Assembly (NCBI GenBank): GCA_965637545.1
Contig: OZ281499.1
Coordinates: forward strand, 16,244,001-16,308,000
Length of the DNA: 64,000 nt
Reading direction: 5' to 3'
From: Phallusia mammillata
Lineage: Eukaryota
Within the stretch, counting starts at the first letter, position 1, and each line of letters starts with the position of its first letter. Positions 55,244 through 64,000 of this stretch are shown here, one piece after another. Both the position numbers and the translations under genes were made by a program. The notes under the pieces are model-generated. The model was not told the origin of the DNA. It saw only the letters and a list, made by a program, of their open reading frames with translations, and made no database searches.

Positions 55244-55285
55244 ATGGCAGATACAATGGAAAACATATACGACGAAGTTGCAGAG
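55244..55285 (+). CDS. CLIC: CLIC long isoform, putative first coding exon (MADTMENIYDEVAE)
   Basis: ATG with upstream in-frame TAA at 55211; phase-0 donor GAG|GTAAGC matches the phase-0 exon at 58280; similar acidic composition. The linkage is inferred. Confidence 0.55.
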
Positions 55286-55841: not shown

Positions 55842-58279
55842 TATGAGGACTTGTAAGAAGGATTAGAACGTAAAACAGGCTGTTCTTTAGCACAGGTTGT
55901 TTCTCACGGCGTGACGCATTATTCTAACAATGATATGACTTAAATAAATCTCGCGCTATAACGAGAAACAAAAATCAAATAGCTTACGTATGCACCATCC
56001 CAAACGTGGCAGGGATTGTAAAACGGGAGTTGCTCAAACTAAAAGGGCAAGAGCTACCTGTTACAAGAGCGAGGGGCAACCTCGCCTTCAAGAATATTAC
56101 TATAATAGGCTACTACTTGTTTGACAAACACCGTTCGTTGGCAATGAAATTACACAAGTAGAAAAAGAGTCAACAATGGTTGATGGTTTGATGAGCACAT
56201 TTTATGACATACCAAAGAAATGAGGCGCCAAACGAACTATTTCGATTCCTTACAGACATTGCTCACACGATTAAAAAATCGTTTACTTTTTTGTTCCAAA
56301 CTCAAACTTACTTTAGATTCTGATATAACACCTAATGCGCGGCGCAGGCAATTTAGGTCGTTCTCACATATGAAGTGGTAAAACTATAACGTAACCTACA
56401 CAATTTAATCACGAAAGGTGAAACGGTGTTAAGTTTTGTTTGTACGTTAGCAAAGTGACACAGTTAGACCTGTGCCCACCTGATTACATATACGGAAATG
56501 ATGCGTCACATTAGTGATAAAGATTCTATACCTAACATTAGAATGTTATGTGGTAGGTCGATATACTACCTGCAGGTATTTCTACAAGGAAGTAGCCCAA
56601 CTGATTGATTTTAACTGATCTGTTACAGAGTGTAATGAGGTTTTTAGATATTGGCCCAGGATGATGTATCTAGGTTAGTTTATAACTGTGTGTTGCATTT
56701 TATATCGCCGTTGCAGCATCAAAGGCAAATGTATTGCAATAAGATTTGCGTTACAAACTAATAGTCAGGGAAAGAAAGCCAAAGTCGTGCAAATTCGAAG
56801 AGCATTTGTCGTTAATTAATTAGGTTGTCAGCTTTATTTTTGCACGTCGAACTGAGTTGATCTTTCCGTTCATACATTTTAAGAATACCAATAACTCCAT
56901 CCAAAGGAAATTTGGTATTTGCATTTCTTTTAAACAGTGGAATGATTGTACTTTTAAAGTTATGTTTAGAAAATGATTTATGCTACAGAACGAACACATG
57001 GTTAATAAAAAAAAAACTTGTTTTATACACAACGATTCAGCAGCATTTTTGTCAAATTCATGTGAAAAAAAAACTGATTTCGAAATAAATTTTTGGTGCC
57101 TTTGTGCAAAAACACATACGTTTGATGCAAAAAGAGCAGCAATTTGTCACAATTTTGTAAAATGCCAGTGAAATGCACATAAAAATGCGCAACTAACGCA
57201 TTCAGTTTACAATCTTGTAAGAAACGATTGTCAGTGCATATTGTAAACATTAACTCAATTCAGTTTTATTGCAACTTGCCCTTGCCCCTAACCTTAACCA
57301 AAAAAAATCAGATAATCTCGAACATGGTGGTAATTTCGAACTAATCAGCTGCCTTCGACGTTCCGTTTCGAGCACCATTGCCAATCCCCGTCATGCCGAT
57401 ATAGCTATGACGTCACATGCTTGAAAAAGATCCAAGTATCTTTCCAAATGTTCTACGCGACAACGCCTTTCAGCGCCTTCCAGCTCATGACCGTGATTTT
57501 TTATTTTGAAATTAACTAACATTATCTGCAAACGATAAGACACATTACGCATTAGATACTTGGTAAAAGTTGTGCACAATTTTGAGAATGCAGCAAGGTT
57601 TTTATTCCAAGTTTATCGCACATGTCTGACAGTCATGCCCGAATTCCTGTGTAAAAAAGGGTAAGGTGACATTTACTTAAGTTCACAGCCTAGTCTACAA
57701 ATACCAGTGACAATGAAAAATATGTATGTTGTTTGTTTGAGGGTTCCATACGGACCATACCACATAAAAGCTTAGGACGATATTAGCTTTCATCATTTAC
57801 TATATTCAGTTCTACGGTATTGTTGCTTGTTGTGCAGTGCAAAGGTGGATCTGTTTATGTAACTTTTACTTAAAGAAGGAAAACAAACCTAAATAAAGTT
57901 AAAATTTAGCTAACAAAATAGAAGGAAAGGAAATTGCTCAAAAAAGATAATGTACGAATTGCATTTCATATTTGAACAACACAGGAATACAGCTTACTTT
58001 ATTTAAAGCTTTTGATGTACAACATGATAAAAAATAACACAAACCTCCAACTCAAAAATAGACAAGCACAACAAATTTAAAGATTAGAATTAGTTTGTGC
58101 TTAAAATCCAGACATACTTAAAACTTTATGCATCAAAAATCCCCTTATTTTGTATTATCTATGTTGTTTGCTCAAAATGCATTGATTCGTATTAACCAAG
58201 TTTAACGAAAAAAAGCAATGTGTTTGGTAGTTTATTGACCAACGATGTCAATTAAAAGAATTGCATTTTTTTTTACCAG

Positions 58280-58543
58280 GGTGTTGGTTCGGAGTATGTA
58301 AATGATAACACAGCTGAAGCTGCAGACATACCAAATTCAGAAGTAGATTACATTCACCATTACGAAACTGAAGCTCAGCCAGAAGCTGACTTACCGCAAC
58401 CTCCGGAACATCTGTACGAGTTTGAGACTCACTCCTCTGCATCATCAGCAAGTGGTAAAGAAGAAGCCCCAAAGTCTCCAGTTGGAATTGCTAGCATGGC
58501 TGAATTGGTTGTTCAAGGCATTGAGAATCTAAAAACAGAAGAT
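58280..58543 (+). CDS. CLIC: CLIC long isoform, acidic exon (GVGSEYVNDN...MAELVVQGIENLKTED, 88 codons)
   Basis: Strong acceptor TTTTTTTTTACCAG, donor GAT|GTATGT; open in phase 0; Glu/Asp/Pro-rich. Also has an internal ATG in good context. Confidence 0.8.
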
Positions 58544-58702
58544 GTATGTAACACTAGGTTGTATTGTAGTCCATTCAGATTTTTGTAACTTGAGTCAAAA
58601 ACATAACATGATATTTGTTCTTATATTATGTATTGGTATAACATGCAAGGTATTGATAAATTTAAATGGCAGCTTTTTATTACAATAGAACCTAAATTTC
58701 AG

Positions 58703-58774
58703 GAGGACCCCGAGGTTAAGACAATCAATTGTGAAGGAGAAAAAACAGAAAAGACTATTTTTCTCTTTGTAAAG
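58703..58774 (+). CDS. CLIC: CLIC beta-1 exon variant A (EDPEVKTINCEGEKTEKTIFLFVK)
   Basis: Acceptor AAATTTCAG; ends in LFVK at a phase-0 donor AAG|GTTAAA (weak). Confidence 0.6.
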
Positions 58775-58973
58775 GTTAAAACTCAAATTTTAGTTGACCA
58801 CTGCGACCTGATTTTATTTATTTTAGGATTATTTTGAAATTCTAACCCAGATTTTTGAAAATCTTATTTAAGCATTATTTTATCAGCTTCATAGAAAACA
58901 TGATTCTACAACATCTAAAACTGCATGCAACATTATTTTATTTTTATTGTGTTGATGCATGTTGACTGAACAG

Positions 58974-59078
58974 AAACCAGAAAAGGACAACGCAGTAGTT
59001 GTCAATGGCAATGGTGCCTGTGCAGACAGTGTGTCTTCCAACAAACGACCTGATCCACAAATTGCTCTTTTTGTGAAG
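58974..59078 (+). CDS. CLIC: CLIC beta-1 exon variant B (KPEKDNAVV...NKRPDPQIALFVK)
   Basis: Acceptor GACTGAACAG, donor AAG|GTAGGT; DPQIALFVK matches the CLIC N-terminal motif DPEIELFVK(AG). Confidence 0.8.
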
Positions 59079-61636
59079 GTAGGTTCAGCACTGACAGAAA
59101 CTGGTTTTAATTCAAATTTGTAAATGGCATGTTCACTGCACAAAAAGGGCAACACTGTTTCAAGGTGTATTGTTTGAATAGGTCATTGTTTAGATACTGT
59201 TATCACAATTTGTTGTACCCTTATAGCAGAGTACAACTCAAATGTTTTGAATTTTTGGCAAAAATTCAAAGTTTTCTGCAACAGCAAGGTGCCAATACAG
59301 TAATGTGGTTTTATCTGCAGCTAAATGATTGCTTACTTTAAAAAACTCTGGTATGAGTATGGTGATTGATATAAACATTAAAACATCTAGTAAACCTTTC
59401 TGATTTGGTTACTTGTCATTGATATTTTCACTAGGACAACTGATTGGTAAAGGGTAATTATAACACATTATCTGAAATATGTTGGTTTGGATGAAGTATT
59501 AAAACATTTGATTTGTTCAAAGTGGATGTTTTTCCAAGTTGAATTGATACTATTGGTCTCGTGGTTTCGTAGGTGGCACTTCCCACAAGGGGGTAGTGTA
59601 ATATTTAATAACCAATGTAAAATCATACCTGCAGGATAAAGCTCCTAGTATGTTGTTATTCTTTTTGTATGAAAGCAGACTTTGTTTCTTTACTATGTGA
59701 AAAGTCTATCTTACCTTCTTCAAACATGTTTTTACTTCTCTTGTTCAACTGTTTGTTTCAGGCTTAGTTTACCTACTTTGTTCAATGGTTTTGATGTGAA
59801 AGTTGGCTTGGAGTAGTAAGAGGTAGGGAAGGATCAAAGAGATTTGGAAAATACAGGCAATGACATCCTTTAGGGATTCCCGTGCAGGAAACGTGCATTC
59901 TTATAATCCCTGCAGACAGGTTTCCTTACATTTTCTGACAGTGGTTATTTCCAGTGTGAGAAAGGCAGTAGGGTTATTAATTTACCTTATTACATGTACA
60001 TAGCTACGAAACAAAGGACCGTGATTTCAAACTGGGGCGTCAACGACACAAAAAGGGCAAGGGTGGCGCTCATCAGACGTAAAACCATCCATCAAGTTGT
60101 TAGTTAAAGGAGTTTGCACAAATATTATCAATATTTGTTGCACTTACCGAACCTTCCTTAGTCAAACATCCAGAATCTTCGATTGTTTCCATCATACACA
60201 GTTTGCGCGCTTCAAAATCTTTCGAAACAACATAAACGTGCCGGCAATCCGTTGATCGATGCTAAAACGTTGGAGTACCTTGTACAAACATCGAAAATCG
60301 TTGTTAACAGAGACATTCGGTCCAGAACTAATCAAATCACCGGTGTCTAGCTTAATGATTACCGAGACTTGGTGAGCCACACTTGTATGCCGAAGTTAGT
60401 ACTGTGCACTCCCTGTCAGCACGAAGCCGTCATCATGTGTGCTTCCTATGATGACGACCTTCGTGCTCTTGAATAAATAATTAGATGTCATGCCGTCGAC
60501 CGCCCGGTATATCGCTATGCCTCTTTCGACCGTCGAACTAGCAGCTACGTGCGATATACGAATCGGAACTAATTGCAGTCGCTTTGTTGATTGCAAATAC
60601 ACATGTGTTAGGGCTAACTTGCGAAAATCCGTACGAACAAGTGCACACTTATTCACGAAGTAAAAGTTTCGAGACGTGATGAAGCCGCAGGGCTAGTATA
60701 GGTCACAGCGCTCGGCACGCTGTTAAGTTTCAAGCGCATTCAGTATTGAATAGCCGCAAGGTATTTTCACCGGCAAGGCGATACAGCACCATGCAATCTA
60801 TCAGCTTGTTTAAAAGTCGCCGTGGAAATTGTCAGGTGGTTTGCAGTCGGTGTGGTGTTGGCGTGTAACGTGGCGTTTGATGAAGAATACAATGGTTTAA
60901 TTGCAGCTTTCGTCACAATTGAACATGTCGAAAAGTTGTAGATTAATCCTCGGAGTTATGGCAGTAAGCTGAACGGCAAGTGCTGAATAGGACCCCTGCT
61001 AAGTTGCTTATGTGGGGAGCAGTAGCGCTCTGCCTTGATTTGCTCCGGCCATGCAGAAAATGTTTGCTTTGCTCTTCAATTTTGAAAGGTCCTTCGCCAG
61101 AGCCACAAAACAGCCGCGCCGGCCTCTGTTGGAATTTGTGGCGTTAGTGTGCAAAGATTAGTTTGAAAGTTTCGTTGAGTACTGTCTATTGTCGACGTGG
61201 AAACATCTTCTCCGACTTTTGCTGTGGAGAAGCCAGGATTACTTAAGCAGTGAAGGATAAGGTTTTTATTGCTAAATAACATGTCTAGAATGATGTTTTA
61301 CCACTAAAGGAAGTTCTACTGCAAGCTTATCAAAGATGTTTTGAATTCTTACCAAACGTATGTAAGCTCGTTTAAATACGCTTTACAACTAGATTCCAAA
61401 CAGATTTTGAAAGATTGTAAAATAAAGTGCTATTTTTAAACATAACAAGCATGTTATCACTACGTTTCAAACGTGAAATAGCAATTTTGTCAGCCTTTTG
61501 TTTCAATGTTGTTGCTTAACTAGGACTGTAGGACGTAGTTTTAAGTGCAACTGTGGTGCAAGGGTTTAGGTTTTGCTTTGTTGGCCACTCTGTCTGTTGG
61601 TCATTGAACCGAAACTGAAACATCAGGCAAGCGAAA

Positions 61637-61732
61637 ATGAGTGAAGAAAATGCTCCAATGGAAGTTAGACCAGACTGTGATGGTCAAACATCTCTTAGTG
61701 ACCGTAAACATGTAATAAACTTGTTTGTCAAG
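61637..61732 (+). CDS. CLIC: CLIC short isoform, first coding exon (MSEENAPMEVRPDCDGQTSLSDRKHVINLFVK)
   Basis: ATG in AAAATGA context; ends in INLFVK at a phase-0 donor AAG|GTAAGC. The exon expected next (AG...G.CPF) was not found, so it should lie beyond 64000. Confidence 0.8.
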
Positions 61733-64000
61733 GTAAGCGGCTCCGCCTTCGGAATGTGACTGTTTTTACCCATTTTCAAAAGTTGTTTCTAACATCAGTG
61801 ACATCGGAACGGTCGCATGGACTAATGTAATACATAGCTGTGGAATGCATGTTCTGCTATTGCGTGTATGTGTCACACGAACGGCATGTGCATATGTTTG
61901 CAGTTAATCTTGTTCTTACATTTCACATCACAAGGAAATGTTTTAAGACCAGTTAACAACGATAGTCCGAGCAGTAATATCTTCATAATTTGTACATTTA
62001 ATTGCAATTGAACGATCTGTGTAAACATTTCTTATGTGGCTGATGGGTATACAAATTGTGAGATCAAGCAGTTGCATGTTGGAAAACGTTGTCATGTGTT
62101 TTGAAGTCGTTTGCTTTGCGACTGTCTGATTGTCGTTCCGCTCTGATAACCCCGTTGCAGTTGTACTTCAACTGCAAACATACCGTATCACGTTGTGTCT
62201 CATGGCACAATCGAACCTCAGTGTGCCATTACACGCTTGTGAAAAATCAACAAATCAATACACAATAAAACGCTGTGGTAATCTTCTAGTTTTCACTCAC
62301 ATACTAGACATGCGATTGGTTGGTGAGACTGTAGTTTGTTACAAGGCGTTTTGAAACAGATGAATTCAAGTGGACATTTTTGGAACGCAATAGTAAATAG
62401 CTATGGTATTTGTACAACCACTATTGTGCTATACATGCAATATTATTGGTAAAATACAGTGCACTGTAAAGTAGTTAAAAAGTACCTTCCACTATTTTAA
62501 ACTGTAGGTAAAATCTATAGCGCCCATGCCCAAGTTCTGTTTACTTTGTGGGATATTTGAAAAGATTATGAATTATGATACCCCGCAAGTCCTACTAAGC
62601 GCATGTGCACATACACAGACCTATTGAATTAGAAGGCACGCTCTTTGCGACTTCACATAATCTTTGGAATTAACTTTTAGCGCGACGAGTCAAACTGGTT
62701 TGACCCCTAGTACAGTTTATAGCATGTGATGCTTTATAGGTTAGGTAATGCGAAAATGTCACCATGTGTAGTAGCGCATAAACGTTTATTTCTCCCGGTA
62801 TGAAAATCCACTTCACAGGCCGTGTAGTACGTTTAAAAGCTGATTGTTTGTATAAATGCTCCCTAAATGTGTAGCAAAGGTAAATCAGACCAATTGTCCC
62901 CTCAATTTGCTACATAGGTCAACTCTTTGTGTAACGTTTCGTGGAAACTTTGATGTCAAACATTGGAGTGACTTACATGACGCCAAGATTTAACCAGCAG
63001 TGCGCACTAAACCAACTTATATGTCTTAGTTTTTTGTTACTAGTTTTGTGCAAAGTTAAATCTTTGGAACCCCATAAACGGCGCTGTTGATAAGTTTGTT
63101 AGCGAATATAACGGCCTAAATAAACGTAAAAGCGCCATGTTTTAGTATTCAAACGTTTCGGCAATAGCTCGTGCCATCACCGTTTGAATAATAAAACATG
63201 ACACTTTTACGTCTATTTATATTCGAATACGCCAGTTGTTTATCTCTCGCTTCTACGGTGCACATACACAGGGAAAATGGATGAAAATGCCCATATTTAC
63301 GTTTCTTTGGTCCACACAACGTTAACAATGTGCCAATCTGGATGTGGCCGTACTGGAAAAGATTGCGTGTAATTTGTGCGTAAGTGGACGAATCACTTTC
63401 GTTGTCACTACAGTGGGCGTTGTACGCATTCTTTGACCACAGGGCTTTATTTGGTTAGCTACCTTTCCCAGTGAACCGGGCGTCCCTTATGTGCTTTGTG
63501 CAGTTATAAATTGACGTGCTGTGCGGTATATATTTATCACATACCTTTGTCATGTTTTAAAACCTCATAAATTTAAGGGGTATCAGTTTTTATTGTGTTT
63601 CTCAAACAGTAAAAAGGTTACTGCTTTGCTGTGATTTGGTGTAGCTGTTTTTATGGTAATTATTGGGTGTGTGACTGTTGAGTCTTGTAGGTAATAACTA
63701 TTTTTCCCAGGTCCACTTTATTTCCTTTAAACTTTCTGTTAAGTTTGTTTGACATTGGACAATGCTTTACTCATGTGGAGCTTGAAATCTGAAATGGTTC
63801 TAAAACGAGCTTGCTGTTCTTATATAGTGCCAGGCCTTGGTAAACAAACGTCTCCAAACCTAAGAGCCCAGCCTTTTTTCTCCTGTGGTTAATGGTGTGT
63901 GGTTTCAACTTTGGATCCAATGTTTGTTTTCCGCTTTTGTAAATTCCATCAATAGTTGCTCCAAGTCTGTGTCAAGTTTTCATTTGTAGCAGCAATAATA

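What the first reader, a model, noticed from the sequence alone, without database searches (positions are those of the whole stretch)
58703..61732. Three separate exons encode the first beta-strand (I-x-LFVK) of the CLIC fold
TIFLFVK (58703-58774), QIALFVK (58974-59078) and VINLFVK (61637-61732) each end at a phase-0 donor just before the expected AG…CPF exon. Alternative first exons ending at FVK are known (CLIC5A/B). Here two are internal exons 200 bp apart behind a shared acidic exon, which implies mutually exclusive splicing of a structural core strand, or tandem inclusion that leaves a spare strand. This strand precedes the redox cysteine and lies in the region implicated in CLIC's soluble-to-membrane switch, so the isoforms could tune that transition.
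Basis: partly seen in the sequence, partly recalled or inferred. Interest (0 to 1): 0.7.

Follow-up and report, generated by a model that had tools for sequence, protein, structure and literature searches.

The report
Alternative first-strand exons of ascidian CLIC
The window holds the front end of a sea squirt's single CLIC gene, where three alternative exons each supply the same first beta-strand; this layout is conserved in other sea squirts and already sits in automatic gene annotations, so it is a tidy but fairly ordinary case of alternative splicing.

Summary
The three exons exist exactly as described and belong to the single CLIC gene of Phallusia mammillata. A database protein (CAB3231625.1) is 100% identical to a newly located first exon (55244-55285), the acidic exon and exon B.

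RNA contigs show acidic exon→B (58543→58974). They also show B and C each joined to the same downstream exon, [10 protein letters not shown]…, which lies beyond the window. Exon C starts the dominant short isoform from its own promoter, near 61522.

Exon A was not seen spliced in four runs. It is nevertheless not a decayed copy:
- Ciona intestinalis and Clavelina lepadiformis have the same order: acidic, A, B, C, AGSD.
- Their A exon is also 72 nt and also has an AAG|GTT donor.
- Their RefSeq isoforms use A or B, never both. Ciona also has a model with neither.
- Two spliced transcript contigs from another ascidian join acidic–A–AGSD.

A and B are tandem paralogues (hhalign 94%).

Each alternative exon most likely carries the strand simply because the old exon 1/2 boundary lies just after FVK. 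The isoforms differ in a linker predicted to be disordered, not in the strand core. The idea that they tune membrane insertion is untested.

This is a new variant of the CLIC5A/5B theme, of modest interest. I found no paper describing it.

The parts
55244..55285 (+). Coding part of the first exon of the long isoform (MADTMENIYDEVAE), with donor GAG|GTAAGC.
   Evidence: Six-frame search and splice sites. Identical to residues 1-14 of P0010, CAB3231625.1. It was outside the stretch laid with reads, so its junction to 58280 rests on the database protein.
58280..58543 (+). Acidic, Tyr/Pro-motif exon (88 codons) shared by the long isoforms. Its acceptor at 58280 is also a spliced-leader trans-splice site. 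It holds a conserved in-frame Met at 58496.
   Evidence: Joint 58543→58974 (GT..AG) in X9 and X17, and a spliced-leader loose end before 58278 in X9. 100% identical to P0010 residues 15-102. Homologues in other ascidians have the donor at the same codon. Only 0.27% of 110-codon windows here are stop-free.
58703..58774 (+). Exon A: a 24-codon A-type cassette exon that ends in the first beta-strand (TIFLFVK). Its donor is the weak AAG|GTTAAA.
   Evidence: Translation. Orthologous 72-nt exons lie at the same position in Ciona (L001 9107-9178) and Clavelina (L002 8211-8282), with the same AAG|GTT donor. Alignment A7 gives 46-58% identity. Codon positions 1 and 2 are better conserved than position 3. 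A-type is used in Ciona X2, Clavelina X2 and transcript contigs L003/L004. No junction to exon A was seen in the four Phallusia runs.
58974..59078 (+). Exon B: a 35-codon B-type cassette exon that ends in the first beta-strand (QIALFVK). Its donor is the strong AAG|GTAGGT.
   Evidence: Joined to the acidic exon in X9 and X17, and continues into the AGSD exon by loose ends behind 59079. 100% identical to P0010 residues 103-137. Paralogous to exon A: hhalign 93.9%, E 1.5e-7.
61522..61732 (+). Exon C: first exon of the short isoform. The 5'UTR starts near 61522 and the CDS is 61637-61732 (MSEEN...RKHVINLFVK). Its donor is AAG|GTAAGC.
   Evidence: Contigs of X1, X5, X9 and X17 start at 61522-61550 and end at 61732. 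X1, X5 and X17 then continue with the same AGSD-exon letters. This exon has the highest contig depth in the stretch, though contig depth is a poor measure of expression. The C-type exon is conserved in Ciona, Clavelina, C. savignyi and Styela.

Best explanation
This is the 5' half of the single CLIC gene of the ascidian Phallusia mammillata. The rest of the gene, from the exon that begins [13 protein letters not shown], lies beyond the window's end.

The exon 1/2 boundary falls in phase 0 just after the first strand (...LFVK|AGSD...). From my own knowledge this boundary is shared with vertebrate CLIC genes and so is ancestral. Any alternative 5' exon must therefore bring its own copy of that strand to complete the thioredoxin-like sheet.

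Three such exons exist:
- Exon C has its own promoter, with a start near 61522. It makes the short isoform, which had the deepest contigs.
- Exons A and B are tandem-duplicated cassette exons inside the long isoform, which runs exon 1L, acidic exon, A or B, then the core. They are chosen one at a time.

B has a strong donor and is the form seen in Phallusia RNA. A has a conserved weak AAG|GTT donor and is probably a regulated minor or tissue-restricted choice.

Shown here:
- the exon coordinates;
- the acidic→B, B→AGSD and C→AGSD junctions;
- identity to the Phallusia protein;
- the conserved A-B-C order in Ciona and Clavelina;
- A-or-B isoforms in those species;
- a spliced A-type transcript in another ascidian.

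Inferred:
- that exon A is used in Phallusia;
- that choice between A and B depends on splice-site strength and regulators;
- that the functional difference lies in the 17- versus 28-residue linker between the acidic region and the CLIC core, not in the strand.
For: - P0010 (Phallusia mammillata CAB3231625.1) equals window exons 55244-55285, 58280-58543 and 58974-59078 exactly, then continues [13 protein letters not shown].
- Its precomputed Pfam hits are CLIC-like_N, GST_N_2 and GST_C_2. It matches solved CLIC6/4/5/2/1 structures at E 3e-82 to 3e-73, with IALFVK aligned to ITLFVK of 6ery.
- Read laying gave a GT..AG joint 58543→58974 in two runs from two studies. Identical loose ends follow 59079 and 61733.
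- The Ciona (L001) and Clavelina (L002) loci have the same order: acidic, A (72 nt), B, C, AGSD.
- Isoforms X1 (B-type) and X2 (A-type) exist in both species.
- Transcript contigs L003/L004 read acidic-A-AGSD without B.
- Exon A shows codon-position conservation of 13-18 of 24 at positions 1 and 2, against 8-12 of 24 at position 3.
- A and B profiles align over the whole exon: hhalign 93.9%, E 1.5e-7.
- AlphaFold2 places the exon-encoded IALFVK (Phallusia, B-type) and IFLFIK (Ciona, A-type) as the first strand. The preceding residues have pLDDT below 50.
Against: - No junction into or out of exon A was found in the four Phallusia runs laid. Depth over A was about 0-1.4. Contigs drop rare variants, and only four runs were examined.
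- Ciona RefSeq isoform X3 skips both A and B. The pair is therefore not strictly mutually exclusive, at least as annotated.
- RefSeq X-isoforms are automatic models.
- I found no intronic RNA pairing that could enforce exclusivity.
Confidence: 0.8

Rival explanations
1. Exon A is a silent relic in Phallusia: a tandem duplicate of B that is no longer spliced, with only B and C functional.
For: No junction to A appeared in four runs, and the acidic exon is joined directly to B. The donor GTTAAA is weak. The one Phallusia protein in the databases is B-type.
Against: The frame, the 72-nt length, the AG acceptor (aaatttcag, also present in Clavelina) and the GT donor are all intact. A is 46-58% identical in protein to A-type exons of Ciona, Clavelina and a third ascidian, while the 40-nt flanks are mostly near the identity expected by chance (10-18 of 40; the upstream flank of Phallusia and Clavelina shares 23 of 40). 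Third codon positions diverge most. The same GTT donor is used in species where A-type isoforms are annotated or assembled from RNA.
Confidence: 0.13
2. A and B are included in tandem. The product would carry a spare strand sequence (…FLFVK-KPEKD…IALFVK-AGSD).
For: Both exons are multiples of 3 and in phase 0, so the frame would stay open. The 199-nt intron between them is long enough to be spliced.
Against: No 58774→58974 joint was found. No tunicate protein returned by the searches has both types. The RefSeq isoforms of Ciona and Clavelina hold A or B, never both.
Confidence: 0.03
3. The isoforms differ functionally through the strand itself, with the variable residue in I-x-LFVK changing the stability of the N-domain. 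On this reading they tune the soluble-to-membrane or redox transition of CLIC.
For: The x residue is type-specific and conserved: F/Y in A-type, N in C-type, and A/M/S/F in B-type. The strand sits directly before the CCPF cysteines.
Against: The rest of the strand is the same in all types. The largest and most conserved differences lie before the strand, in a segment modelled as disordered. No assay or structural difference was obtained here. AlphaFold2 confidence in the N-domain was only moderate.
Confidence: 0.12

Closest known systems
Vertebrate CLIC5A / CLIC5B (alternative first exons of CLIC5)
   Same: One CLIC core is joined to a short or a long N-terminus through alternative 5' exons (PMC10582032). 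From my own knowledge, each of those exons ends in the first strand …LFVK. The long form carries an acidic, Tyr-rich extension.
   Different: Here the long N-terminus is split into three or more exons, and the strand-bearing part is a pair of internal cassette exons (A/B) in addition to the alternative first exon C. The ascidian acidic region shows no significant BLASTP similarity to fish CLIC5b extensions (E 1.1), so homology of the extensions is unproven.
RefSeq/UniProt models of ascidian CLIC: Ciona intestinalis XP_078493367/369/370 (isoforms X1-X3), Clavelina lepadiformis XP_076818968/969, Phallusia mammillata CAB3231625.1
   Same: The same gene and the same exon types. The A-type and B-type isoforms are already present as automatic models.
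   Different: For Phallusia only the B-type protein is on record. I found no paper describing the A/B/C arrangement in two full-text searches.
Mutually exclusive tandem-duplicated exons in general
   Same: The exons are adjacent and paralogous, share the same phase, and encode the same structural element. One is chosen per transcript in the annotated isoforms.
   Different: Frame does not enforce exclusivity, because including both exons or neither stays in frame. The intron is not too short, and no competing RNA pairing was detected. A skip-both isoform is annotated in Ciona.

Membership tests
CLIC (chloride intracellular channel, GST-fold) family | CLIC-type N-domain plus GST-like C-domain | tested here: met
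   P0010 is 100% identical to the window's exons. It carries PF22441 CLIC-like_N, PF13409 and PF13410. It matches CLIC6/4/5/2/1/3 structures at E 3e-82 to 4e-55 over residues 128-366. The domain-encoding exons themselves lie beyond the window's end.
CLIC (chloride intracellular channel, GST-fold) family | First strand …LFVK followed by AGSD…G-x-CPF(S), with the active-site cysteine | tested here: met
   RNA contigs continue from exons B and C into [10 protein letters not shown]. P0010 reads [21 protein letters not shown]. The same exon is present in the Ciona and Clavelina loci.
CLIC (chloride intracellular channel, GST-fold) family | Soluble-to-membrane transition or channel/oxidoreductase activity | not testable with these tools
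   This needs biochemical assays.
Mutually exclusive exon pair | Adjacent exons that are homologous to each other and in the same phase | tested here: met
   A and B are 199 nt apart and both in phase 0/0. hhalign of A-type against B-type profiles gives 93.9%, E 1.5e-7 over 23 columns.
Mutually exclusive exon pair | Transcripts contain exactly one of the two exons | tested here: inconclusive
   In Phallusia only B-containing junctions were seen. In Ciona and Clavelina, A-only and B-only isoforms are annotated and an A-only transcript was assembled. Ciona X3 has neither exon. No both-exon form was seen.
Spliced-leader trans-spliced ascidian mRNA | The 16-nt leader ATTCTATTTGAATAAG at the mRNA 5' end, joined at an AG acceptor and absent from the local genome | tested here: met
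   The X9 contig has GTACGGG+ATTCTATTTGAATA directly before 58278, and its last two letters AG coincide with the acceptor. The 21-mer is absent from the window. The leader sequence is as in Table 1 of PMC1488885. This rests on a single contig from one run. Reading GTACGGG as the tail of a template-switch oligo is my own knowledge.

The most novel reading that the evidence does not exclude
The ascidian CLIC gene makes four or more N-termini from one core. The routes are a promoter choice (C), a conserved regulated A/B cassette switch governed by an invariant weak AAG|GTT donor, and spliced-leader trans-splicing onto the acidic exon. Trans-splicing removes the first-exon AUG, so translation would start at an invariant internal Met (58496). 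The A/B switch would set the linker that couples a Tyr/Pro-motif acidic scaffold region to the CLIC core in a tissue-specific way. It would be a pre-duplication counterpart of the division of labour among vertebrate CLIC4, CLIC5A, CLIC5B and CLIC6.
Probability: 0.25. Interest if true: 0.45.

Novelty: new variant of a known kind. Interest (0 to 1): 0.33.

Why it matters
Ascidians have one CLIC gene where vertebrates have six (PMC3896409). How that single gene diversifies its N-terminus therefore bears on how vertebrate CLIC paralogues and the CLIC5A/5B split arose. The conserved A/B pair with its conserved weak donor is a compact, experimentally tractable splicing switch, since both Ciona and Phallusia embryos can be manipulated. 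It also corrects a tempting reading. The triplication of a core strand follows from where the ancient exon boundary lies, and is not evidence that the strand itself is being tuned.

Tried and rejected
1. I searched 61733-64000 and the whole window in six frames for the CPF exon. None was found, so the core lies beyond the window.

2. I searched the window for the 21-nt loose end found upstream of 58280. It is absent and proved to be the ascidian spliced leader, not an upstream exon.

3. Nucleotide alignment of the three exons with their flanks showed no similarity beyond the last ~12 nt. Homology between A and B is visible only at the protein-profile level. A against C aligns only over the strand.

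4. I looked for competing intron RNA pairing, using RNAduplex on the three introns in three species against shuffles. The first run timed out. The second gave z from -2.3 to +1.2 and nothing shared between species. Whole-intron duplexes are a crude test, and the shuffles preserved only mononucleotide content.

5. I tested homology of the acidic extension to fish CLIC5b extensions. It was not significant.

6. The minus-strand exons overlapping the locus have stops in all frames, so a hidden antisense coding gene is rejected.

7. The look-up of encoding contigs found nothing for the Ciona X3 protein, because only the longest product of a gene is on record. I used X1 instead.

8. I did not run a second word search for Phallusia A-type proteins. 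The first search returned only one Phallusia CLIC protein and not even the abundant short isoform, so a blank would have meant nothing.

Full report
**Observation**

Each ends in AAG followed by GT, in phase 0. A (72 nt) and B (105 nt) have AG acceptors and lie 199 nt apart, behind an 88-codon acidic exon at 58280-58543. The exact tetrapeptide LFVK occurs only six times in all six frames of the 64-kb window, and three of those are here, on one strand, each before a GT. The window has no N. No AG…CPF exon lies between 61733 and the window's end, so on sequence alone the CLIC assignment rested on a few residues.

**RNA evidence in this genome**

I laid contigs from four runs, from four studies, on 58001-64000.

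- A GT..AG joint 58543→58974 is present in X9 and X17. The acidic exon is therefore spliced straight to B, and A is skipped.
- Contigs ending at 59078 (X9, X17) and at 61732 (X1, X5, X17) continue with the same 30 letters. Together with the shared G, these read [10 protein letters not shown]. B and C therefore share one downstream CLIC exon.
- Exon C contigs begin at 61522-61550. One is directly preceded by an Illumina adapter. They have by far the highest contig depth, although contig depth is a poor measure of expression. C is thus the first exon of a short isoform with its own promoter.
- No joint or loose end involves exon A, where depth was about 0-1.4.
- Contigs drop rare variants, so this shows only that A was not the assembled form in these four runs.

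**Identity of the gene**

A profile-free search of 1.8 billion representatives with the acidic exon found seven relatives. One is a 321-aa CLIC of Ciona intestinalis (XP_078493370.1, isoform X3).

A word search seeded with that protein returned P0010 (Phallusia mammillata, CAB3231625.1, 369 aa). P0010 is 100% identical to three window exons: MADTMENIYDEVAE at 55244-55285, the acidic exon, and exon B. It then continues [25 protein letters not shown]….

P0010 has CLIC-like_N and GST Pfam domains. It matches solved CLIC6, 4, 5, 2, 1 and 3 structures at E 3e-82 to 4e-55, with IALFVK aligned to ITLFVK of 6ery. In Ciona, CLIC is reported as a single-copy gene (PMC3896409).

**Is exon A real?**

I fetched the orthologous loci of Ciona intestinalis (L001) and Clavelina lepadiformis (L002). 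Both have the same order on one strand: first exon, acidic exon, A-type exon, B-type exon, C-type first exon with its own ATG, then the AGSD exon.

- The A-type exon is exactly 72 nt in all three species.
- Its donor is AAG|GTT in all three: GTTAAA, GTTTAG and GTTCTA.
- RefSeq lists Ciona isoform X1 with the B-type exon and X2 with the A-type exon (DEAEPFTVNESGIELEKPIFLFIK). Clavelina X1 has B-type and X2 has A-type (EENEVRTINEGGSQTEKVIYLFIK).
- Two Logan transcript contigs from another ascidian (L003, L004) read acidic exon, then ENDVQTINSEGDANDKSIFLFIK, then [13 protein letters not shown], with no intron and no B-type exon. That is direct RNA evidence that the A-type exon is used alone.
- Phallusia exon A is 46-58% identical in protein to these exons.
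- Codon positions 1 and 2 are better conserved (13-18 of 24) than position 3 (8-12 of 24). The 40-nt flanks are mostly near the identity expected by chance (10-18 of 40), apart from the upstream flank shared with Clavelina (23 of 40).

Exon A is thus under protein-level constraint and is not a decayed duplicate. Its use in Phallusia itself remains inferred.

**Origin**

Profiles of A-type and B-type exons align over the whole exon (hhalign 93.9%, E 1.5e-7). They share a [TV][IV]N-x-G motif and the terminal strand, so A and B are tandem paralogues.

A against C aligns only over the nine residues of the strand. The C-type (…DRKHVINLFVK) is itself conserved in Ciona, C. savignyi, Clavelina and Styela.

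**How it most likely works**

The phase-0 boundary after …FVK is the exon 1/2 boundary that, from my own knowledge, vertebrate CLIC genes also have. Every alternative 5' exon must then carry the first strand, or the thioredoxin-like sheet is incomplete. That explains three copies of a core strand without any need for the strand itself to be tuned.

AlphaFold2 models were made of the Phallusia B-type protein (from the conserved Met) and the Ciona A-type protein. In both, the exon-encoded IALFVK or IFLFIK is the first strand, and the residues before it have pLDDT below 50. Confidence in the N-domain was moderate: mean pLDDT 77.6 and 70.8.

The isoforms therefore differ mainly in a linker that is probably disordered, of 17 residues (A) or 28 residues (B) before the strand. 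They also differ in one type-specific strand residue: F/Y in A-type, N in C-type, and variable in B-type.

Choice between A and B is not enforced by frame, because including both or neither stays in frame. The intron is not too short, and I found no intron pairing that could enforce it. The pattern of a fair acceptor and weak donor on A, and a poor pyrimidine tract and strong donor on B, suggests regulated competition. That step is inference. Ciona X3 skips both exons and would lack the strand. It may be a minor by-product.

**Comparison with what is known**

The closest described case is CLIC5A/CLIC5B, which arise by alternative first exons (PMC10582032). The ascidian gene adds an internal A/B cassette pair.

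The acidic extension is not detectably similar to fish CLIC5b extensions.

The isoforms exist as automatic RefSeq models. Two full-text searches found no paper describing them. I rate this a new variant of a known kind, of modest interest.

**Limits and rules followed**

The earlier scan note s1-405525 is this same finding. I did not find it on other DNA.

Noticed in passing
window 58278-58280 (acceptor of the acidic exon); conserved Met at 58496: One RNA contig (X9) carries GTACGGG+ATTCTATTTGAATA(AG) directly on the acceptor at 58280. This is the Ciona-type 16-nt spliced leader, preceded by what looks like the tail of a template-switch oligo. Such an mRNA lacks the exon-1L AUG. Its first in-frame AUG is 58496, a Met invariant in seven ascidian sequences, and it follows two short upstream ORFs at 58296 and 58302.
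   Followed up: partly
window 58277-58528, 60148-60275, 60360-61198, minus strand: There is a spliced antisense transcript. CT..AC joints 58528→60148 (X1, X5) and 60275→60360 (X1, X5, X17) are minus-strand introns with good signals: donor GTAAGT and acceptor ttctgtttttag. All minus frames have stops, so it is probably non-coding. It seems to diverge about 320 bp from the exon-C start. It overlaps the acidic exon, and exons A and B lie inside its large intron.
   Followed up: partly
L001 (Ciona intestinalis), protein P0001: RefSeq isoform X3 joins the acidic exon directly to the AGSD exon. It would lack the first beta-strand of the CLIC fold altogether. It is unclear whether this is a real product or a by-product of splicing.
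   Followed up: no
This would be local synteny conserved between Ciona and Phallusia.
   Followed up: no
P0010 and other tunicate CLICs (beyond the window's end): Tunicate CLICs read E-C-I/V-G-C-C-P-F, with a third cysteine at the position that is S in the one vertebrate sequence I aligned. Vertebrates have G-N-C-P-F at the active site.
   Followed up: no
window 58266: A 2-nt length difference in the T-run just upstream of the acidic exon's acceptor appears in contigs of two runs, X1 and X17. It is probably a polymorphism.
   Followed up: no
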